IMG/VR virus record: IMGVR_UViG_3300025012_000028
Span: 62,001 to 126,000 of that record
Reading direction: 5' to 3' (one strand)
DNA: 64,000 nt
Positions 32,181-60,083 of this stretch are shown here, piece by piece; the stretch's first letter is position 1, and the number at the start of each line of letters is the position of its first letter. The notes beneath the pieces are model-generated. The model was given only the letters and a program-made list of their open reading frames with translations. It did not search any database and was not told the DNA's origin. Position numbers and translations under genes: made by a program.

Positions 32181-32357
32181 ATGATCCAGAAAACTCAGCG
32201 CAGGTATAAGAGACAGGTCAACTCTTATAAACCAAACCACAAAAAGAGCAAAACTTCATCACTCAACCATTGGGAAGTTGTGATACGAGAAACGTGGTGG
32301 TTGCTGGGTATCATTCCTATTTACAGCAGAGACACCATCATCACATCTACCATGTAA
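32181..32357 (+). CDS. Single-gene early island, basic protein with WWLLGIIPIY (58 aa)
   Basis: AAGGAG RBS; hand translated. Confidence 0.6.
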   Translation: MIQKTQRRYKRQVNSYKPNHKKSKTSSLNHWEVVIRETWWLLGIIPIYSRDTIITSTM

Positions 32358-32397
32358 TAAGAAAAGGCTTAGAGTTTCCTCTAAGCCTTTTCTTATT
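32356..32397. terminator. Bidirectional intrinsic terminator
   Basis: AATAAGAAAAGGCTTAGAG...CTCTAAGCCTTTTCTTATT. Confidence 0.85.
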
Positions 32398-33128
32398 TAA
32401 AATAAAGCATCTTCTTCGGTATCATCCACCACCGATTCTGCTTCTGTGGAAATTGGATCGTTGTATGCTGTTTTCTCCTGAGTCTCCACATCATAAATCT
32501 GTTGGTTGATGGTTTTAATTAACTCTAATGCTTGTAATTCGGATGGCATTGAAACATCTGTTGATACTTCGGAATGGTCGTACATATAAACCTTACATTT
32601 TAATTGATAAGCATTCCTATTCCCAAAGATATATCCCAAAGCAACTTCATCTTCCACATGACTCACTTCAAATAGCTTCTTGCTGTTCACATGATACACC
32701 AAATCCCCCTGTTTAGGATAGAAGGGTAGATAGGGTTGGGTTTCATTGGTGGACGGATCAGGATTCGTTTTCGCTTGCGAGAAGGTTATCTTTGGGCATG
32801 TGAATGTTTCTTCATCTGTGGTTCCCAAACCCAACTTAGAATATATATCCGCATTCTGCCAACCACCATTATTATTCAAGTTGTCTGCTTGTAAAAACAT
32901 TCTGGTTGCGGTCTGAAGCTTAGATGTAAGATATTCCCCAAAGATTGGTTCTGCTTCACCAAGATCTCTCTCAATATAGAATACTTCTACACCATGAAGA
33001 CAATTTGATTCATTCCATATATTCGAATACAAATTGGCTTCTCCTAACTCATTTACATTGAAGTTTCTGGTAAATCTAAATTGACCATCGTTGGGGTTAT
33101 TGAAAAATTGGGGTATTTTAGGATTCAT
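32397..33128 (-). CDS. gp14: Neck protein (gp14-like)
   Basis: GVEVFYI.R...IFGE, SKLG, PKQGDLVY, LFEVSHVE. Confidence 0.92.
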   Translation of the reverse strand: MNPKIPQFFNNPNDGQFRFTRNFNVNELGEANLYSNIWNESNCLHGVEVFYIERDLGEAEPIFGEYLTSKLQTATRMFLQADNLNNNGGWQNADIYSKLGLGTTDEETFTCPKITFSQAKTNPDPSTNETQPYLPFYPKQGDLVYHVNSKKLFEVSHVEDEVALGYIFGNRNAYQLKCKVYMYDHSEVSTDVSMPSELQALELIKTINQQIYDVETQEKTAYNDPISTEAESVVDDTEEDALF

Positions 33129-47549: not shown

Positions 47550-47582
47550 AAAACCCTCTAAGATTTCTCTTAGAGGGGTTTT
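47550..47582. terminator. Bidirectional intrinsic terminator
   Basis: AAAACCCTCTAAGA...TCTTAGAGGGGTTTT. Confidence 0.85.
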
Positions 47583-47601
47583 CTATATTAAAAATCCTTT
47601 T

Positions 47602-47707
47602 TATAAATAAAAGAAACGGATAAGTTCAGTTGTTGACGCAACCGAACAACAGGAAGGGGAAACCCGCTGTCTCCGTTCACTTCTATTTATATAAGGGGAA
47701 TCTGATG
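47602..47707. ncRNA. Structured endonuclease leader, copy 1 (putative cis-RNA)
   Basis: Near-identical to 52331-52436; folds as three-way junction; late boxes at both ends. Confidence 0.6.
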
Positions 47708-48802
47708 AACAAACCAGAAGTTGTTGAAGTCAAAGCCTACCATATTGTCTACCTCACCACAAATCCTTTTAACAATAAAATCTATGTTGGTAAACATTCA
47801 ACCAACAATCTTAACGATGGGTATAAAGGTTCTGGTAAATATTTAAATAAAGCTTTTAAGAAATATGGAAAGAAACATTTTAAATTCCAAATTCTTCATT
47901 ACTGTCTTACTTTGATGGATGCTTATGAAGTTGAGGGGTGGATTGTAGATCAAGCTTTTATTGATAGACCAGATACTTACAATGTGGTCGTTGGTGGAAG
48001 AATGACCCCAGATTGGACAGGAAAGAAACGATCTGAAGAATGTATAGCTAAACATAAAATGTATAGAGCAACAGAAGAAACAAAGAAATTAATCAGTATT
48101 GCAAATACTGGAAAAATTAAAACTCCAGAACAACTTGAATTAATGAGAACATTATCGACTGGAAGGAAAGATTCGGAAGAGACAAAACAGAAAAAGAGGT
48201 TGGCAAACTTAGGAAGGAAACATACCGAAGAAGCATTAAGAAAAATGAGAGGAAGGAAATTAACAAAAGAACACATTAATAAATTAACCGGAAGAAAACG
48301 TACAGAAGAGACATTATTAAAATTAAAATGTAGAGTTGTAAAACCAGAATCAATTTTACAAGGAGTTCAGACTAGAAGTAATTATTTCCCAAAACTTTTA
48401 TTAATTTCTCCTACTGGTGAAACTCATATAATACAATATTCCCTTCAAACTTTCTGTAGAACGCACAATCTTTCTTATACGACCATTTTTACAAATTTAA
48501 ATAAAGGACCAATTAAGTTTTATTACAATAGTAAAAGTGAAAAATATATCAATTCAATTGGGTGGGAACTAAGAGACGATTCATTTTCACAATCAAATAT
48601 AAAATTACCAAAAGAATATTTGATCATATCCCCAGATGGAAAAGAACATAAATGTAATTATATTTCTTCATTTTGTCGGCAACATAATCTATCCAACCAT
48701 ATTTTATCGAGACATATAGACAAGGGAATTATATCATGTAGAAACGGGAAATCTAAAGAGTATATGAACAATAAAGGTTGGGAGATACGAAGTATAAAAT
48801 AA
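47705..48802 (+). mobile_element. GIY-YIG homing endonuclease with NUMOD3-like repeats
   Basis: IVYLTTN...IYVGKH...YKGSG; repeated G(R/K)K.(S/T)EE; start at MNKP after AAGGGG RBS. Confidence 0.92.
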
Positions 48803-48832
48803 GCAGTTCTATATTTTAGAACTGCTTATTTT
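48796..48832. terminator. Bidirectional intrinsic terminator
   Basis: AAAATAAGCAGTTCTA...TAGAACTGCTTATTTT. Confidence 0.85.
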
Positions 48833-49098
48833 TAGTGTTTTTTGAATCTAACGCCCCGTCTTTGTACAATTTTATGAAGCTTGCCATCAGCGCCATAACT
48901 GAAACCCTTACGTCTTGGCTTGTTCTTAATTTTCATTTTATATTTTTTAGAGCGTCTCTTCAGTTTGGATTTATTTTTCATTCTATAACGCTTTGCTAAT
49001 AATTTCTTTTTTTGTGTGAGATGGCGCACCTTTATTATTTTCTCTTCTATCACTTCATCACATAAAACTTCATTTAGAATACTTTCTAATATACTCAT
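48832..49098 (-). CDS. Lys/Arg-rich putative prohead core protein (gp68-like character)
   Basis: MSILESILNE leader; highly basic body. Confidence 0.55.
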   Translation of the reverse strand: MSILESILNEVLCDEVIEEKIIKVRHLTQKKKLLAKRYRMKNKSKLKRRSKKYKMKIKNKPRRKGFSYGADGKLHKIVQRRGVRFKKH

Positions 49099-49592
49099 TT
49101 CGAAAATGCTCCACCCGCCTCTTCTGGAAGTTTGTCTTCTTCGAATGCAGTTTCATCTTCTTTGGTAGGGGGTTCCTCGTAATATTCTTCATCCGGTTCT
49201 TCCCCAATTTCTGTTTCGATTTCGAAGTAATCGGAAAGAATTTTAATAATCTCCAAGCAGGTAGCATCATCAAACTTATCCGCATACTTGGCAAGAATCT
49301 CAGTAGAAATATCCACACTTTCATCTTCATCGGCAACCTCACCATCAACCAATGCTTCATTTTCCATGATATCCAGAATATTGAAACAGATGTCGCGCAA
49401 CTGTGATTGTGGGGTATCTTCATCTTCTACAACCGTTTCTTCCGGTTCCTCAGTAGGTTCGGTGGGTTCTTCAATAACCTCTTCCTCTTTAGGTTCTTCA
49501 GTAGGAGCGGGTTCTTCTTCAGACGAAAATGCACCTTTCTTTTCTTCGGTTTCCTCAACTGCCTCTTTTAAAATACTATCAAATATATTCAT
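49095..49592 (-). CDS. Highly acidic putative prohead core protein
   Basis: MNIFDSILKE|A; Glu/Asp-rich. Confidence 0.55.
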   Translation of the reverse strand: MNIFDSILKEAVEETEEKKGAFSSEEEPAPTEEPKEEEVIEEPTEPTEEPEETVVEDEDTPQSQLRDICFNILDIMENEALVDGEVADEDESVDISTEILAKYADKFDDATCLEIIKILSDYFEIETEIGEEPDEEYYEEPPTKEDETAFEEDKLPEEAGGAFSK

Positions 49593-49595
49593 TGA

Positions 49596-50162
49596 TCAAT
49601 CCTTTTTAGTTAAAGTATAATTATAGCGCCCATTGTCGCCTTTTACATAAGCCCATTCGATCATAGAGAATTTTTTTAACTCATTATAAACTCTCTTCTG
49701 AATCGAATCAAATTGATTTATAGCTTTATTTATATCTGATTTATTTCTAACCTTTGTACCCAGAACTTCATAACTCCCATAGTTCAATTCATTTTTAGTG
49801 TCGTTGGATATCAAAGCTTCCGGTTTGATATTATCATCTCCATCAACCAATATACTAGAAATGTGGTTGTTGATTTTATAATTCACCTTGGCTTTAGCCA
49901 GCGCAGCAGCAACCTCATTTATTTCAGATTGGGAAACACCAACAAAAGAAAGTGTGATTTTTATACTTCCTCGCAACGAAATTGACTTGTAGGAGTAACC
50001 ATGTCTAGAAGGTTCCACATATCCATCCGACGACTTTTTCTCCTTATAAGAGGCAAGAGAGGACTTCCTGAGAACAGATCGGATTGCCTTTATCAAATCC
50101 TCTTCCGTGTCAAACGATTTCTCGTTGAGTGCTTCCGATAGAATTTTATTTAAAATTTTCAT
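49596..50162 (-). CDS. Putative internal head protein
   Basis: MKILNKILSE|ALNE leader. Confidence 0.55.
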   Translation of the reverse strand: MKILNKILSEALNEKSFDTEEDLIKAIRSVLRKSSLASYKEKKSSDGYVEPSRHGYSYKSISLRGSIKITLSFVGVSQSEINEVAAALAKAKVNYKINNHISSILVDGDDNIKPEALISNDTKNELNYGSYEVLGTKVRNKSDINKAINQFDSIQKRVYNELKKFSMIEWAYVKGDNGRYNYTLTKKD

Positions 50163-50170
50163 GATGATCC

Positions 50171-52303
50171 TTATGACAAGTAGCAACTAAAATTAAAAGT
50201 TTCCGTTCCTTCGATCTTTGAGAAATAAAGTATAATTACACTATTCATGATCGTTCTTCCATCCGTGGTTATGATATCCAAATCCACATCACCATTATCG
50301 GAAGGGAGAACATAATTCTCATTGGCTAGAGATAAATCATATTTATTTAGAATGTTTTTAATTTCATCCAACGGCAACTGAGGAAGTGGTTGAGCTATGA
50401 TTTGTTTCAGTTCCTCGTTGGCATTGACTCTATCAAATGAAAGAAGTCTAGCAGTTTTCTTTTCGGGACGCTCGACCAGATTGTTTGAATCCAATTCGGG
50501 TTCTGGTTCCTCTTCTGGAATTAATTCTTCGGGTTCCACATCAACAGGTTCTTCTAATGATTCATCTTCCATTGGTGGTTCTTCACTGAAAGCACCTTCT
50601 AACATTATATTAAAAACATTAACATTTGATATTTCTTTACTATTTTCAATAAGATTTATATTTTTCCAAGCTTTGAAATTATCCCATTCTGGAAGAATAC
50701 CAGCACATATCATAGCAAGTTTATTTCCATATGCTCTTGCTTGATCTGAATAATCAAATGCAGTATTGGAAGTATATATAATTAATTGTGAATCTTTCCA
50801 CACTTTACAATCATACATCCCCCCGTCAACTTTAAAAACAGATACTTTAAATCCTTTGGGACATTTTACTTTTATATCTTGTTTATGGTCTTCTGTCTCA
50901 CATAAAGCACCTTCCAAAAGTTTCCCAAATAAATTCTTACTCTCAAATTTAAATTTGAGTTGTTCTGATTCATTATCTTTCATGTAGGTCAAAGAATCAG
51001 GAAGAGGATGAACAAATTTAAAATCGTGTGGGAAAGATTCTAAAAAGAATTCAATGTATGCAAACAAATCTGAATTATCTTCTTTAAAAGCTTCTAAATC
51101 TTCTTTAGTCCAATTGGAAAAAGCAGTATGATAGTCTTCGGTGTGTTGAAAAGATTGTTCATCTGGTTCTGAATCCGATTCCATCTCAATCCAATACATC
51201 CATTTGTCCTGCAATTGATCATAAAAATCATACACCGATTCCTTGGCTTCTTTTTCATGCCAAGCTTTATCTTCATCTTCAGTCGGCCACCAAGGATCTA
51301 AAAACATATCAACAAAACTTGGCATTCTATCGTCGGCCCAATTATCGTGGTGGTGGTATTTATGATTACGGGTGAAACTATATTTAAAAATATCAAACCC
51401 TTCTTTAATCACGCGATCCCAATGATTGATTTGCCATTCTTCTTCAATATTATAATCCTCATATTCATCCTCATCTCTGGGACGATTCAGATAATCATCT
51501 TCATTCTCCCAATTCTCATCCAACATTCTATGTGCTGCTGCTTCTTCATCAAAGATAAACTTTAGCGGAGTTCTTTCTTTTATCTTTCCATAATTTTTGG
51601 TGAAGTTAGGCAAATCTTCGATGATACTATATGGTTTGTTGTCGCTGCGATCATTATAATCCCTACTTTCTTGGATTTCGCCATTCTTAATATAAATCTG
51701 GTATTTTTCGAATGGATCATCCACATTGATGAACTGAAGAAGATCACCACTTCTGCTATATGCTCTCCAATGTGAATCGGTGTTTAGATATGCAGTACAC
51801 CAGTTTGCTTGCGGATTGGTCTTATATTGAGCACCTTTAATATTCCCTTCTTGTGTTAGGGTTTCAATACAAATCCATTCATCGGTAACATCAATGACTG
51901 TGATATCATCTGGCATATTGAAGATATCTTTTTCTTTTTTCTTCTTCTGCCTGTTGGATTCAGTTTCTTCTAATGTATCAACATAAGCAAAGAACTCTCT
52001 CCAAGTTTTGAATGAAGTGAAAGAGACACCTTTAGATAGGCGATGGAATTTTTCAAGATCATCTTTGATAGTTTCATGTTCAGCGACATGATGAAGGTCT
52101 AATTCTTTATCTCTCTTTATGAGATTGATAATACCTTCAAGATATTTACCACGCTGACCATTCTTTGAGGTAGGGTCTTGTGCTGCTAGATCATTGAATA
52201 CATCGAGAGGGATAAGTTTATGATCGACATATGAATCATAAAATTTTTGTAATGAAATCTCGATTAAAAATTGTTCTTCTAATATTTTGTGTAAAATTGA
52301 CAT
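50171..52303 (-). CDS. Large putative internal head polyprotein with WCT domain
   Basis: MSILHKILEEQFLIE; DPT....GKY; NWCTA; internal LLE|G, LIE|N, MLE|G; late promoter 52327-52334. Confidence 0.6.
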   Translation of the reverse strand: MSILHKILEEQFLIEISLQKFYDSYVDHKLIPLDVFNDLAAQDPTSKNGQRGKYLEGIINLIKRDKELDLHHVAEHETIKDDLEKFHRLSKGVSFTSFKTWREFFAYVDTLEETESNRQKKKKEKDIFNMPDDITVIDVTDEWICIETLTQEGNIKGAQYKTNPQANWCTAYLNTDSHWRAYSRSGDLLQFINVDDPFEKYQIYIKNGEIQESRDYNDRSDNKPYSIIEDLPNFTKNYGKIKERTPLKFIFDEEAAAHRMLDENWENEDDYLNRPRDEDEYEDYNIEEEWQINHWDRVIKEGFDIFKYSFTRNHKYHHHDNWADDRMPSFVDMFLDPWWPTEDEDKAWHEKEAKESVYDFYDQLQDKWMYWIEMESDSEPDEQSFQHTEDYHTAFSNWTKEDLEAFKEDNSDLFAYIEFFLESFPHDFKFVHPLPDSLTYMKDNESEQLKFKFESKNLFGKLLEGALCETEDHKQDIKVKCPKGFKVSVFKVDGGMYDCKVWKDSQLIIYTSNTAFDYSDQARAYGNKLAMICAGILPEWDNFKAWKNINLIENSKEISNVNVFNIMLEGAFSEEPPMEDESLEEPVDVEPEELIPEEEPEPELDSNNLVERPEKKTARLLSFDRVNANEELKQIIAQPLPQLPLDEIKNILNKYDLSLANENYVLPSDNGDVDLDIITTDGRTIMNSVIILYFSKIEGTETFNFSCYLS

Positions 52304-52330
52304 ATTTTACCTCTATTATTTTTCTTTATT

Positions 52331-52436
52331 TATAAATAAAAGAAACGGATAAGTTCATTGCCTCGGAAACAATGAACAACAGGAAGGGGAAACCCGCTGT
52401 CTCCGTTCACTTCTATTTATACAAGGGGAAGTCATG
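52331..52436. ncRNA. Structured endonuclease leader, copy 2 (putative cis-RNA)
   Basis: Near-identical to 47602-47707 except the P2 hairpin interior and bases around the RBS. Confidence 0.6.
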
Positions 52437-53504
52437 TCAAAACAAAAACTCACAAATGAAATTGTAGATTTTAGATTGAAAAATAGGAATATAATTAGGC
52501 TTGATGATTATATTAATGCCAGAACTAAAATTAGATTCCAATGTACCATTGACGGTTATATTTGGAATGCAAAATCTGATAGCATATTTCAGGGAAACGG
52601 ATGCCCCGAATGTGCGGGTCTAGCCAAGCTAAACAACAAAATTATAGATGATCGATTAATTAAAAGAAATATTCTTAGAAAGGGAGAATATATAAATAAC
52701 AAAACCATAATTCCATTTCAATGTTTGATTGATGATTATATATGGGATGCTAGTCCAGATTACATTCTTAATGGTAATGGGCGTTGTCCAAAGTGTTCGG
52801 GTAATATTCCAGTAACTAATGATTCTTTGGATGTAAAATTAGAAGGAAGAAATATAAAAAGACTTGGAGATGTAAATGGTCTGACGACTAAAATTTCATT
52901 TCAGTGTTTGATTGATAATCACATTTGGGATACATTACCATCCATTATTTTAGCAGGACATGGATGTTTGGTGTGTTCGGGCAAAAAACCAATTTCAAAC
53001 GAACTTATAGATTTGAGATTAGAAGGAAGAAATATAAGAAGACTTGATGATGTTATTAATGACATCACAAAAATACAGTTTCAATGTACCACAAAAACTT
53101 GTAATCATATTTGGTTCACTACCCCTAATAAAATTACAAGTGGTGCTGGATGCCCGATGTGTAAGAAGAAAAATGAGAAAAGAATTTTAGAATATCTTAT
53201 CGAAAAATATGAGCATGAAAATATAGAACCACAATTTTATATTTTTGCTAATGATAGAAAATATTATATCGATTTTGAAATTAATGGAATTTTAATTGAG
53301 TATCATGGCAAACAGCATTACGAGCCAGTGCGCTTTGGTGGACGTAGTGAAGAGAAAACAAAAGAAGCATTCATCAAACAAGTTAAACGCGACTACGAAG
53401 TTAGAGAATATTGTAGAGAGCACAATATAAGACTGATTGAAATCCCATATTGGCTCTCCCACAAAGAACAATATAAGTTATTGGAAGAATTATTTATAAT
53501 TTAA
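52434..53504 (+). mobile_element. Endonuclease with four Zn-ribbon repeats and C-terminal PD-(D/E)XK/Vsr-like domain (Hef-like)
   Basis: 4x FQC...W.......G..CxxC; IDF...IEYHGKQHY...D...LIEIPY. Confidence 0.85.
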
Positions 53505-59372: not shown

Positions 59373-60083
59373 CTATTCTCCTTGTTCCACAACACCATTA
59401 ATATATTCCAACCACCACGGACTCATGAGATTGAAATCATAATTTGGTCGAATAGTTTCACCATCTTTTATAAAGAGAGTGCCATTCTTGAATTGTGGTT
59501 CTAGATCATTCCAGTTCTTTCCTTTTTGGAAACACAAATCGTGTAGATCGGGCGTTTTCTTCCCATGCAATTCTTTATGTGAATAAAGAGATTGTGCGAG
59601 CATCTGAATGGAGTTTCTAAGCCAATCCTGATATCTCCACCGGAAATAATTGATAACTTCCTCTTTGGGGATATTAAAACAACGAGAATCGAAATGTGCT
59701 GGCTGATAGAAACCTTTCATATTTCCATATGATATTGTAAAATTTACACTAGCCATCGATGCACTGATGGAACAAATCTTTTGAATATTATAATCAAAAT
59801 AAGCATCCGTATTCAGTTTATCGTAATCGGTAAGAAGCAAACTAATTTCGTCTGATTGAACATAACCCATCTTACATCCTTGGATATTTTCCACCAGATA
59901 TTTACAGGTTTCTTCCATTGATTTGATTATTTTCACATCGAACGGTTTCTGACAACCCTTAGTGAATGTGTGAAACGCCTTACCATCCAATCGAATAATA
60001 ACGGGAGTTCTGCGTGTAAGATGAAACCTAGAACGGTTTTCATAGTTTCCTTTCATGCGATCACCCAACGAATCATTTTTCAT
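59373..60083 (-). CDS. tRNA(His) guanylyltransferase Thg1-like
   Basis: RLDGKAFH, YVQSDEIS, QK..S..AS, FDSR, WR..D..RNS. Confidence 0.95.
   Translation of the reverse strand: MKNDSLGDRMKGNYENRSRFHLTRRTPVIIRLDGKAFHTFTKGCQKPFDVKIIKSMEETCKYLVENIQGCKMGYVQSDEISLLLTDYDKLNTDAYFDYNIQKICSISASMASVNFTISYGNMKGFYQPAHFDSRCFNIPKEEVINYFRWRYQDWLRNSIQMLAQSLYSHKELHGKKTPDLHDLCFQKGKNWNDLEPQFKNGTLFIKDGETIRPNYDFNLMSPWWLEYINGVVEQGE

What the first reader, a model, noticed from the sequence alone, without database searches (positions are those of the whole stretch)
47595..52436. Conserved ~100-nt structured element upstream of two unrelated endonucleases
Seen: 47602-47707 and 52331-52436 both read TATAAATAAAAGAAACGGATAAGTTC-[variable]-GAACAACAGGAAGGGGAAACCCGCTGTCTCCGTTCACTTCTATTTATA(T/C)AAGGGGAA...ATG. 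One precedes a GIY-YIG/NUMOD3 nuclease and the other a Zn-ribbon PD-(D/E)XK nuclease with no protein similarity. The element folds into a three-way junction: P1 AACGGA/TCCGTT; P2 GTTC/GAAC extended by GTTG/CAAC in copy 1 and ATTG/CAAT in copy 2, with different loops; P3 ACAG/CTGT with a GAA/G internal loop and a GGG-GAAA-CCC hairpin. Apart from bases around the RBS, only the P2 interior changes and pairing is kept, which suggests selection on structure. Inference: a portable expression/mobility cassette or nuclease-associated RNA that swaps nuclease cargo. It could be an autoregulatory leader, an RNP partner with a nuclease-specific P2 loop, or a recombination handle. I do not recognise it as a named RNA family.
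Basis: partly seen in the sequence, partly recalled or inferred. Interest (0 to 1): 0.85.

Follow-up and report, generated by a model that had tools for sequence, protein, structure and literature searches.

The report
Structured leader for phage selfish nucleases
A roughly 100-base cassette (late promoter, three-armed RNA fold, inverted promoter copy, ribosome-binding site) sits in front of selfish DNA-cutting enzyme genes in uncultured T4-like phages, and it probably keeps those enzymes expressed late and at low level.

Summary
Window 47600-47700 and 52329-52430 are about 98-100% identical except inside one stem, and they precede two unrelated homing-endonuclease genes.

The element is a real RNA family. 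I found 26 distinct members on 24 uncultured phage contigs. Each lies directly upstream of a mobile nuclease gene: GIY-YIG, DUF4379-type, HNH-type, a Cys/His family, and one TnpB.

The layout is: T4-type late-promoter box (NATAAATA), then a three-way junction with conserved unpaired UAA / AAC / YUGUC, then an inverted copy of the box, then the Shine-Dalgarno (SD) sequence. Covariation supports all three helices. Rfam has no match. Ordinary late genes in the window have short, unstructured leaders.

It is a new variant of the known T4 scheme in which a late promoter sits inside an RNA structure that limits endonuclease translation. My best mechanistic reading (about 45%) is that the opposite strand yields an RNA whose exposed loop pairs with the SD, as IS10 RNA-OUT does. 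No transcript data exist for these phages.

The parts
47554..47577 (.). Hairpin that reads as an intrinsic terminator on both strands. It ends the upstream + strand gene and would also end a minus-strand RNA leaving copy 1.
   Evidence: (I4)
47602..47609 (+). Copy 1: T4-type late-promoter box TATAAATA, which is the 5' arm of the outer stem.
47615..47677 (+). Copy 1 three-way junction: P1 47615-47620 / 47672-47677; UAA 47621-47623; P2 47624-47647; P3 47649-47670.
47654..47661 (+). Copy 1: AAGGGGAA in P3, an exact copy of the gene's SD.
47684..47691 (-). Copy 1: inverted box. It reads TATTTATA on + and TATAAATA on -, is the 3' arm of the outer stem, and is a candidate late promoter for an opposite-strand RNA.
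47693..47700 (+). Copy 1: Shine-Dalgarno sequence AAGGGGAA, 4 nt before the ATG.
47705..48802 (+). Homing endonuclease gene of GIY-YIG type (NUMOD3, phrog_314), 365 aa, followed by a terminator at 48796-48832.
52327..52334 (-). Separate late-promoter box with an 18-nt leader for the 710-aa minus-strand gene (50171-52303). It overlaps the + box of copy 2.
52331..52338 (+). Copy 2: late-promoter box TATAAATA.
52344..52407 (+). Copy 2 three-way junction: P1 52344-52349 / 52402-52407; UAA 52350-52352; P2 52353-52377; P3 52379-52400.
52384..52391 (+). Copy 2: AAGGGGAA in P3, a copy of the SD.
52414..52421 (-). Copy 2: inverted box, TATAAATA on the minus strand. A transcript from it would be a 105-nt structured leader running into the 710-aa gene.
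52423..52430 (+). Copy 2: Shine-Dalgarno sequence AAGGGGAA.
52434..53504 (+). DUF4379 (treble-clef zinc finger repeats) / CapR / phrog_559 endonuclease gene, 356 aa.

Best explanation
The element is a portable late-expression governor for selfish nuclease genes of T4-like phages, and it probably works on both DNA strands.

Shown by computation:
- A late-promoter box (NATAAATA) is followed at a fixed distance by a covarying three-way junction with conserved junction bases.
- Then comes the inverted copy of the box, and then the Shine-Dalgarno sequence (SD) of a mobile nuclease gene.
- The tip of P3 carries a copy of that gene's own SD, flanking bases included.
- Ordinary late genes in the window lack such a leader.

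Inferred:
1. Late transcription from the + box starts at the first base of P1, so the nuclease mRNA begins with the junction. Longer read-through RNAs also contain the box, which pairs with the inverted box and, in many members, lets upstream bases cover the SD. This is the T4 I-TevI / segB logic.
2. The inverted box is itself a late promoter facing the other way. It gives an opposite-strand RNA that folds into the mirror-image junction. Its P3' loop is complementary to the SD of the nuclease mRNA and is exposed.
3. That RNA pairs with the SD (and with the leader) and holds translation of the nuclease down, in the way IS10 RNA-OUT limits transposase.

Because short patches of identity are enough for recombination in T4-type phages, the cassette can also move between nuclease genes. 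That would explain the near-identity of the two copies in the window.
For: Family and structure:
- A covariance model (R2) trained only on the diverged members c3 and c4 finds the two window copies at 40 bits, E about 3e-7.
- A scan using only non-helical features, plus model R3, gives 26 distinct members.
- On 13 members, 87% of cells are paired against 34-44% when partners are slid. 24 of 34 pairs change on both sides (P1 6/6, P2 9/10, P3 7/8), and RNAalifold returns the same fold.

Specificity:
- All 26 members precede nuclease genes of at least five classes.
- 15 other late genes in the window have leaders of 13-45 nt with dG 0 to -2.9, against 90 nt and -22 / -24 kcal/mol for the two nuclease genes.

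Promoter:
- TATAAATA occurs 28 times against 5.7 expected, just upstream of genes.
- The phage has a gp43-type polymerase.
- NATAAATA is the late-promoter consensus in distant T4-like phages (PMC2984593).

Read-through repression:
- P(unpaired) of the SD is 0.29 in read-through RNA against 0.46 in late-start RNA, p = 5e-4.
- The 5' flank is complementary to the cognate SD more than to other members' SDs, p about 0.016.

Opposite-strand RNA:
- The P3 apex shares on average 7.5 nt with its own SD region against 4.6 nt with other members' SD regions. 0 of 20000 permutations reach the observed sum (further cases). Identity of two purine-rich segments is most simply explained by a shared complementary partner, and the only one encoded in the element is the other strand.
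- A strand-neutral helix count gives 35 A.C (which are G.U on the other strand) against 9 G.U; counting only positions flanked by Watson-Crick pairs gives 13 against 3.
- The opposite strand folds more stably in 13 of 15 members, and its z-score is better in all 15 (-3.27 against -2.35 on average).
- The anti-SD has P(unpaired) 0.72 against 0.35 for that RNA as a whole, p = 6e-7.
- The minus-strand box is a perfect TATAAATA in L201 and L202, where the plus box is not and the extra base is not needed for pairing.

Precedent: CfrI, an antisense RNA overlapping a homing endonuclease gene in the T4-like phage S-PM2 (PMC2984593).
Against: - There is no transcript evidence for either strand. All the phages are uncultured, and their closest cultured relatives lack the element.
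- A promoter-like box on the opposite strand follows automatically from pairing with the + box, so it is not independent evidence.
- In about half of the members an opposite-strand transcript would run into a neighbouring gene rather than form a discrete small RNA. Only c1 and L207 have a terminator next to the box.
- Base composition and non-independent members (c1, c2 and L196 share their outer stem and P1; L207's are nearly the same) inflate the strand asymmetry. c3 favours the sense strand.
- The opposite-strand RNA is fully complementary to the leader anyway, so an extra anti-SD loop is not strictly required.
- Most members were found with a pattern that demanded the boxes, TAA(G), (C)TGTC and their spacing. 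Conservation of those features is therefore partly by ascertainment. The exceptions are c1-c4, L206b, L209b and L228b, which did not depend on the pattern and still show them.
- The alignments used for pair counts were fitted to the model.
Confidence: 0.45

Rival explanations
1. Sense-strand-only leader. The junction matters only as the 5' end of the nuclease mRNA.

On read-through transcripts, the box / inverted-box stem (extended by upstream bases) hinders ribosome access, as with T4 I-TevI, segB and mobE. On late transcripts, the junction begins at +1 and acts as a 5' stem-loop that protects the mRNA from 5'-end-dependent decay. The exposed SD copy would act as a standby or decoy ribosome site, like STAB-SD.
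For: - The box is the 5' arm of the outer stem, and P1 begins at the predicted start.
- The SD is less accessible in read-through RNA than in late-start RNA.
- The 5' flank shows cognate complementarity to the SD.
- Simpler relatives have a plain hairpin with the box in the 5' arm and the SD in or next to the 3' arm (L035, L115).
- c3 and c4 have G.U pairs on the sense strand.
- The scheme is known in T4 (PMC2988022).
Against: - It does not explain why the P3 apex matches the flanks of each gene's own SD, not just a generic GGAG core.
- It does not explain the excess of A.C over G.U in the helices.
- A stabiliser would raise expression, which is odd for genes that T4-type phages usually keep low, and ordinary late genes do without one.
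- The conserved stem stops 1-3 nt short of the SD, and late-start RNAs still have only moderate SD access (0.46).
Confidence: 0.3
2. Bidirectional late-promoter and insulator cassette that doubles as a recombination handle, as PeSLs do.

A nuclease gene that lands between resident genes carries promoters facing both ways, so that neighbours stay expressed. The repeated cassette is a site of homologous exchange that shuffles nuclease genes. The RNA fold would be secondary.
For: - Boxes are present on both strands in all members.
- In about half of the members the upstream neighbour is on the opposite strand and would be served by the inverted box.
- c1 and c2 share 29-nt and 57-nt identical or near-identical blocks 4.7 kb apart.
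- Leaders look mosaic: c1, c2, L196 and L207 share the outer stem and P1 but differ in P2 and P3.
- The PeSL precedent exists (PMC2839356, PMC4122927).
- T4 endonuclease genes are known to embed promoters for their neighbours (PMC2988022).
Against: - A promoter pair needs no 65-nt junction. The heavy compensatory change in three helices and the conserved junction bases show selection on RNA structure.
- The 710-aa neighbour of copy 2 has its own box with an 18-nt leader.
- The SD copy is unexplained.
- PeSLs have sigma-70-type early promoters and a terminator stem-loop, which are not found here.
Confidence: 0.12
3. The RNA is bound by a protein: the nuclease itself (autoregulation or an RNP, with P2 as a nuclease-specific address) or a common phage or host factor that recognises the conserved junction.
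For: - The conserved unpaired UAA / AAC / YUGUC at the junction look like a recognition surface.
- P2 varies between otherwise identical leaders.
- I-TevI is a known autorepressor at its own late promoter (PMC2988022).
Against: - The same leader subtype serves unrelated enzymes, and five nuclease classes share the junction. Recognition by each nuclease is therefore unlikely.
- Leaders persist in front of truncated genes (L209a 26 aa, L225 45 aa, L199 with a lost start codon).
Confidence: 0.08
4. A new self-cleaving or otherwise catalytic RNA that processes the 5' end of the nuclease mRNA.
For: - It is a small three-way junction with conserved junction bases.
- By analogy, the lariat-capping ribozyme lies upstream of a homing endonuclease ORF in twin-ribozyme introns (my own knowledge, not tested here).
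Against: - No similarity to any Rfam ribozyme, even at E<=1.
- The junction strands are very short (3, 2-3 and 4-5 nt).
- No conserved tertiary contacts are evident.
Confidence: 0.03

Closest known systems
T4-type control of homing endonuclease genes by a late promoter embedded in an RBS-blocking RNA structure (I-TevI, I-TevII, I-TevIII, segB, Aeh1 mobE; PMC2988022)
   Same: A late-promoter box lies directly upstream of a homing endonuclease gene and forms part of an RNA structure that only longer, earlier transcripts can complete. The SD is less accessible in those transcripts. The phage belongs to the T4 superfamily.
   Different: - The known cases are simple hairpins that contain the RBS.
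- Here the conserved stem ends 1-3 nt before the SD.
- A conserved, covarying 65-nt three-way junction fills the loop.
- The 3' arm is an exact inverted promoter box.
- P3 carries a copy of the SD.
- The same module recurs across five nuclease classes and many phages.
seg43(25) leader of Aeromonas phage 25 (described in PMC2988022)
   Same: A very stable predicted RNA structure lies immediately upstream of the RBS of a free-standing GIY-YIG endonuclease gene and does not include the RBS.
   Different: It is described as a single hairpin in one phage. No junction, inverted box or SD copy is reported. I did not retrieve its sequence, so this comparison rests on the review's description only.
IS10/Tn10 RNA-OUT / RNA-IN antisense control of transposase (my own knowledge)
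   Same: - Face-to-face promoters inside a mobile element.
- A small, stably folded opposite-strand RNA.
- An exposed loop complementary to the ribosome-binding region of the element's own nuclease or transposase mRNA.
- The function is to hold a selfish enzyme down.
   Different: - In IS10 the complementarity comes from physical overlap with the RBS. Here the overlap stops short of the SD, and complementarity comes from a duplicated SD inside P3.
- The promoters here are phage late boxes.
- The opposite-strand RNA here is only inferred.
CfrI antisense RNA of cyanophage S-PM2 (PMC2984593, citing Millard et al. 2010)
   Same: An experimentally detected antisense RNA in a T4-like phage that overlaps a homing endonuclease gene and is co-expressed with it.
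   Different: CfrI is about 225 nt and overlaps the endonuclease coding region and psbA, not a 5' leader. No shared sequence or structure was found, and none of the element sequences I used as blastn queries matched a cultured phage.
PeSL mobile regulatory cassettes of T4-type phages (PMC2839356, PMC4122927)
   Same: Short composite regulatory motifs that are repeated within a genome, lie next to accessory genes, and can serve as sites of homologous exchange. Copies 1 and 2 are direct repeats 4.7 kb apart.
   Different: PeSLs combine a sigma-70-like early promoter with a terminator stem-loop that lies upstream of it. Here the promoter is a late box, the structure lies downstream of it, and no sigma-70-like promoter is present. 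Recombination at these cassettes is inferred, not shown.
5'-terminal stem-loop and STAB-SD mRNA stabilisers (ompA leader, B. thuringiensis cryIIIA; my own knowledge)
   Same: A structure beginning at the first transcribed base, and an SD-like sequence in the leader that is not followed by a start codon.
   Different: Those elements raise the expression of highly expressed genes and do not copy the flanks of the true SD. Here the element is confined to selfish nuclease genes.

Membership tests
T4-type late-promoter / RBS-blocking RNA structure upstream of homing endonuclease genes | T4-type late promoter box (TATAAATA / NATAAATA) directly upstream of the endonuclease gene | tested here: met
   The box is present in all 26 members. 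The motif is enriched (28 against 5.7) and sits 13-45 nt upstream of other genes in the window. The consensus is taken from PMC2984593.
T4-type late-promoter / RBS-blocking RNA structure upstream of homing endonuclease genes | An RNA structure on longer transcripts sequesters the RBS | tested here: inconclusive
   The conserved outer stem ends 1-3 nt before the SD. Upstream bases extend it over the SD in c1, c2, L198, L202, L207 and L209 but not in all members. SD P(unpaired) is 0.29 against 0.46, and flank complementarity has p about 0.016.
T4-type late-promoter / RBS-blocking RNA structure upstream of homing endonuclease genes | The late promoter lies inside the structure, so late transcripts cannot form it | tested here: met
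   The box is the 5' arm of the outer stem, and the predicted start (about 6 nt after the box) falls at the first base of P1. The start position is inferred from T4, not mapped.
T4-type late-promoter / RBS-blocking RNA structure upstream of homing endonuclease genes | Mapped late transcript and delayed translation | not testable with these tools
   The phages are uncultured and no expression data are available.
PeSL (promoter-early stem-loop) cassettes | Strong sigma-70-like early promoter | tested here: not met
   No sigma-70-type match lies in or next to either copy.
PeSL (promoter-early stem-loop) cassettes | Terminator stem-loop as part of the repeated motif | tested here: not met
   The repeat runs from the box to the SD only. 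The terminator upstream of copy 1 (47554-47577) is not part of the repeat and is absent at copy 2.
PeSL (promoter-early stem-loop) cassettes | Repeated copies act as recombination points that shuffle genes | tested here: inconclusive
   There are two near-identical copies in front of unrelated genes, and leaders look mosaic. No empty-site or recombinant genomes were found.
Cis-encoded antisense control of a mobile-element enzyme (IS10 RNA-OUT type) | Face-to-face promoters giving overlapping transcripts | tested here: inconclusive
   Late-promoter boxes face each other about 75-80 bp apart in every member, but the second box follows from pairing with the first. Transcription cannot be tested here.
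Cis-encoded antisense control of a mobile-element enzyme (IS10 RNA-OUT type) | Stably folded antisense RNA with an exposed loop complementary to the ribosome-binding region of the target | tested here: met
   This holds for the predicted RNA only. The opposite strand has mean z = -3.27. The anti-SD is 5-10 nt long (own-SD identity: 0 of 20000 permutations) and has P(unpaired) 0.72 against 0.35.
Any Rfam 15 family (I believe these include HEARO, the IS605-orfB RNAs, C4 antisense RNA, the self-cleaving ribozymes and the riboswitches) | A score at or above the family's gathering threshold | tested here: not met
   No match in the whole window at gathering thresholds, and none at E<=1 on three loci holding members.
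5' stabiliser / STAB-SD | SD-like sequence in the leader without a start codon, near a structured 5' end | tested here: met
   The SD copy is in the P3 apex, and no consistent start codon follows it (reading of the sequences).
5' stabiliser / STAB-SD | Increases mRNA half-life | not testable with these tools
   This needs expression experiments.

The most novel reading that the evidence does not exclude
The cassette is a two-strand RNA device carried by selfish nucleases. Two facing late promoters transcribe the same three-way junction in both directions. The opposite-strand RNA is a dedicated riboregulator whose loop is kept complementary to the nuclease's Shine-Dalgarno sequence by a duplicated SD inside P3.

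This would be a general, exchangeable governor used by GIY-YIG, HNH, Vsr-like and TnpB nucleases in a large uncultured branch of T4-like phages. It would be the first antisense control system defined for phage homing endonucleases.
Probability: 0.4. Interest if true: 0.8.

Novelty: new variant of a known kind. Interest (0 to 1): 0.65.

Why it matters
Homing endonucleases and TnpB-type nucleases are the commonest selfish genes in large phages. How they are kept from harming the phage is known in only a few T4 cases.

This finding defines a new, well-supported RNA family:
- 26 members, with covariation in three helices and conserved junction bases.
- Specific to such genes and shared by at least five nuclease classes.
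- It has an unusual feature, a copy of the gene's own ribosome-binding site displayed on a hairpin tip. That makes a concrete, testable prediction of opposite-strand RNA control.

It also shows that promoter-leader cassettes, not only genes, are exchanged among selfish elements in phages. The family could be added to RNA databases and used as a marker for mobile nuclease genes in viral metagenomes.

Tried and rejected
- **Rfam and tRNA scans.** Rfam at gathering thresholds on the whole window and at E<=1 on member loci found nothing. There are no tRNA or tmRNA genes.
- **blastn against cultured phages.** Copy 1, L216 and L207 gave no match.
- **A third copy in the window.** The only extra model hit (32355-32418, minus strand, 17 bits) is a plain terminator hairpin.
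- **Close relatives of the two nucleases in IMG/VR.** None besides the source contig. About 620 kb of loci encoding distant relatives held only c3, c4 and two simple-hairpin versions, L035 and L115.
- **Bacterial and archaeal genomes.** All 15 pattern matches failed the model, as did the matches on giant-virus MAG contigs.
- **Cultured relatives of the GIY-YIG enzyme** (ValKK3, pf16, Matisse). They have short plain leaders.
- **P3's 3' strand pairing with the SD as an alternative fold.** Only 3-6 bp in some members, and not general (reading).
- **A leader peptide started by the SD copy.** No consistent start codon follows it.
- **A 9-mer shared by copy 1's P2 and its coding region** (AGTTGTTGA, p about 0.013 before correction). 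It is not seen in other members, so I treat it as chance.
- **The junction plus the U-rich inverted box as an intrinsic terminator.** The 3-6 nt spacers are not consistently U-rich.
- **A longer ORF from TTG 47630 that would make the element coding.** Rejected because homologues start at the catalytic motif, and because of the covariation.
- **MAFFT alignments.** They put P2 and P3 out of register. One model-guided alignment (A9) was contaminated by reverse-strand hits and was replaced by A10.

Full report
**1. The observation**

The repeat runs from three bases before TATAAATA to the end of the Shine-Dalgarno sequence (SD). 47600-47628 equals 52329-52357 exactly, and 47644-47700 equals 52374-52430 at 98%. 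Only the inside of P2 differs. A 28-nt core occurs twice in the window against none expected.

They also form an outer stem that pairs the leading TATAAATAAAAG with CTTCTATTTATA just before the SD. Read in structural register, P2 differs by two double substitutions, and an A.C mismatch becomes A-U.

The genes that follow are a NUMOD3 / phrog_314 homing endonuclease of GIY-YIG type (47705-48802) and a DUF4379 / CapR / phrog_559 endonuclease (52434-53504). Rfam has no match, and there are no tRNA genes.

**2. The genome**

The window is positions 62001-126000 of IMGVR_UViG_3300025012_000028, a 214,553-bp contig. The same phage appears in groundwater assemblies. It has a gp43-type DNA polymerase that is at most 35.5% identical to those of cultured T4-like phages.

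TATAAATA, the T4 late-promoter box, occurs 28 times against 5.7 expected. It sits 13-45 nt upstream of 15 other genes, whose predicted leaders are unstructured (dG 0 to -2.9 kcal/mol). The two nuclease genes are the exceptions, with 90-nt leaders of -22 and -24 kcal/mol. So the element starts with a late promoter, and the structured leader is not a general property of late mRNAs. Distant T4-like phages use the relaxed consensus NATAAATA (PMC2984593).

**3. A family, not a pair**

A paralogue of the second nuclease lies on the same contig outside the window (P0028, 48% identical). A 44% homologue lies on another contig (L037). Both are preceded by the same layout with entirely different helix sequences.

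A covariance model built only from those two recovers the window copies at 40 bits, E about 3e-7, in a 423-kb search. A scan of IMG/VR that used only the non-helical features (box, TAAG, TGTC, inverted box) returned new members and no false positives. Relaxed patterns and a 13-member model added more. In all there are 26 distinct sequences on 24 contigs, with up to four copies in one 213-kb contig.

Matches in bacterial and archaeal genomes and on giant-virus contigs failed the model. The members tried by blastn match no cultured phage. The closest cultured relatives of the GIY-YIG enzyme have short plain leaders.

**4. Structure**

On 13 members, 87% of cells form standard pairs, against 34-44% when partners are slid by 1-3 columns. 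24 of 34 pairs change on both sides (P1 6/6, P2 9/10, P3 7/8). The covariation score is 0.50 against 0.16 in shuffles. RNAalifold independently gives the same outer stem and junction.

The unpaired junction bases are conserved: UAA after P1, AAC after P2, YUGUC before the return strand of P1. They are present even in the three members that were not found through a pattern (L206b, L209b, L228b).

Caveats: the alignment was fitted to the model. The boxes and two junction motifs were required by the search patterns. The helices and the SD copy were not.

**5. Association**

Every member lies directly in front of a mobile-element nuclease gene:

| Class | Members |
|---|---|
| GIY-YIG / NUMOD3 | 13 |
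| DUF4379 type | 6 |
| phrog_655 HNH type | 2 |
| Cys/His-rich family with weak endonuclease hits | 3 |
| Cys/His-rich family, annotation uncertain | included above |
| TnpB (OrfB_IS605 plus Cas12f1-like TNB domain) | 1 |

One further member, L211, is also a GIY-YIG enzyme by PHROGs and is counted among the 13. Three genes are degraded (a lost start codon, and ORFs truncated at 26 and 45 aa) while their leaders are intact.

**6.

(a) The 3' arm of the outer stem is the inverted promoter box. The opposite strand therefore also carries NATAAATA, facing the first box about 75-80 bp away. It is a perfect TATAAATA in 9 of 15 members. These include two where the plus-strand box is imperfect and the extra base is not needed for pairing.

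(b) The 5' side and tip of P3 repeat the gene's own SD, flanking bases included. The mean shared substring is 7.5 nt with a member's own SD region and 4.6 nt with other members' SD regions. None of 20000 permutations reaches the observed sum. The later members behave the same way, sharing up to a 10-mer. Leaders that share the outer stem and P1 (c1/c2, L196, L207) have different P3 tips, each tracking its own SD.

(c) Simpler relatives exist. L115 has the box and inverted box separated by an 8-nt loop just before the SD. L035 has a 20-bp hairpin with the box in the 5' arm and the SD in the 3' arm. These link the family to the classical T4 arrangement.

**7. Which strand?**

The helices pair on both strands, but the exceptions are lopsided.
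- A strand-neutral count over the outer stem, P1 and P2 finds 35 A.C positions (G.U on the opposite strand) against 9 G.U. Counting only positions flanked by Watson-Crick pairs gives 13 against 3.
- The opposite strand folds more stably in 13 of 15 members, and it has the better shuffle z-score in all 15 (-3.27 against -2.35).
- In that RNA the complement of the SD is displayed in the P3' loop, with P(unpaired) 0.72 against 0.35 overall.

Against this: c3 favours the sense strand, some members are not independent, and composition may contribute.

On the sense strand, the SD is less accessible in read-through RNAs than in RNAs starting at the predicted late start (0.29 against 0.46, p = 5e-4). 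The bases upstream of the box are modestly but specifically complementary to the cognate SD (p about 0.016).

**8. How it most likely works**

The general logic is the known one for T4 endonuclease genes. A late promoter sits inside an RNA structure, so earlier, longer transcripts are poorly translated and late ones are translated (PMC2988022). What is new is the conserved junction, the inverted box and the SD copy.

The identity between P3 and the SD is hard to explain on the sense strand alone, because generic ribosome binding does not require matching flanks. It follows naturally if an opposite-strand RNA is made from the inverted box and uses its P3' loop to pair with the SD and limit translation. 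IS10 RNA-OUT does this for transposase. An antisense RNA overlapping a homing endonuclease gene has been detected in the T4-like phage S-PM2 (PMC2984593).

I rate this dual-strand model at about 0.45 and a sense-only leader at about 0.3. A bidirectional promoter and recombination cassette of the PeSL kind gets about 0.12, a protein-binding RNA about 0.08, and a ribozyme about 0.03.

All statements about transcription are inferred. Nothing here shows that either RNA exists.

**9. The two window copies**

The protein relatives of copy 2 (c3 on the same contig, c4 elsewhere) carry a different leader subtype. Copy 2's own leader is nearly identical to that of the unrelated GIY-YIG gene 4.7 kb away. 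The same subtype precedes GIY-YIG genes on other contigs (L196, L207).

The simplest reading is that copy 2 acquired its leader by recombination with a copy 1-type cassette, with a patch of difference in P2. It resembles what PeSLs do, although the defining PeSL features (a sigma-70-type promoter and a terminator stem-loop within the motif) are absent (PMC2839356, PMC4122927).

**10. Verdict**

The element is real, conserved and specific. It is a new RNA family, and it is a new variant of a known kind of control. The SD copy and the strand asymmetry make the opposite-strand RNA hypothesis worth testing.

Noticed in passing
L228:5091-6284 (IMGVR_UViG_3300037067_017464): A TnpB-type gene (OrfB_IS605 plus Cas12f1-like TNB domain, 365 aa) in a phage contig is driven by the same leader as the homing endonucleases. 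A GIY-YIG gene with its own leader lies divergently about 1.1 kb away.
   Followed up: partly
L209:6880-6957, L225:3339-3473, L199 near 2830: Three members keep an intact leader in front of a degraded nuclease gene: ORFs of 26 aa and 45 aa, and an ATG changed to ATT when compared with the L206 allele.
   Followed up: partly
L026:3815-3852 (same contig as the window, outside it): The minus-strand gene next to c3 has its own hairpin (TTCCTCCTAGA...TCTAGGAGGAA) that would pair its GGAGGAA ribosome-binding site. RBS-covering hairpins may be common in this phage.
   Followed up: no
window 59373-60083 (-): The 236-aa ORF carries a Thg1 (tRNA-His guanylyltransferase-like) Pfam hit in the gene table of the matching ENA contig (L023). 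That is an unusual gene for a phage.
   Followed up: no
window 52440-53091: The DUF4379-type nuclease gene contains three diverged tandem copies of a repeat spaced about 180 nt apart (62-82% identity). They correspond to repeated treble-clef zinc-finger modules.
   Followed up: no
L023:5990-6003 compared with window 52421-52436: A natural allele of copy 2 in a groundwater assembly lacks 2 nt between the inverted box and the SD and has ATGCCA instead of ATGTCA. The junction itself is unchanged.
   Followed up: no
L228:3894-3992 compared with L214:4126-4224: These two alleles differ by one base in P3. The change turns an A-U pair into A.C on the nuclease-sense strand, which is G.U on the opposite strand. 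That is in line with the family-wide asymmetry.
   Followed up: partly
window 49596-50162 (-): This 188-aa ORF has a borderline YscJ/FliF Pfam hit (24.3 bits against a cut-off of 24.4). Together with the 710-aa, 165-aa and 88-aa neighbours, none of which has any family match, it lies between the two nuclease cassettes.
   Followed up: no
P2 loops of many members (for example L026:3927-3932, L037:1417-1422, window 52361-52369): Many P2 loops contain a CGG-purine-rich motif (CGGGAA, GUCGGA, CCUCGGAAA, ACGGCAA), although the P2 stems vary freely.
   Followed up: no
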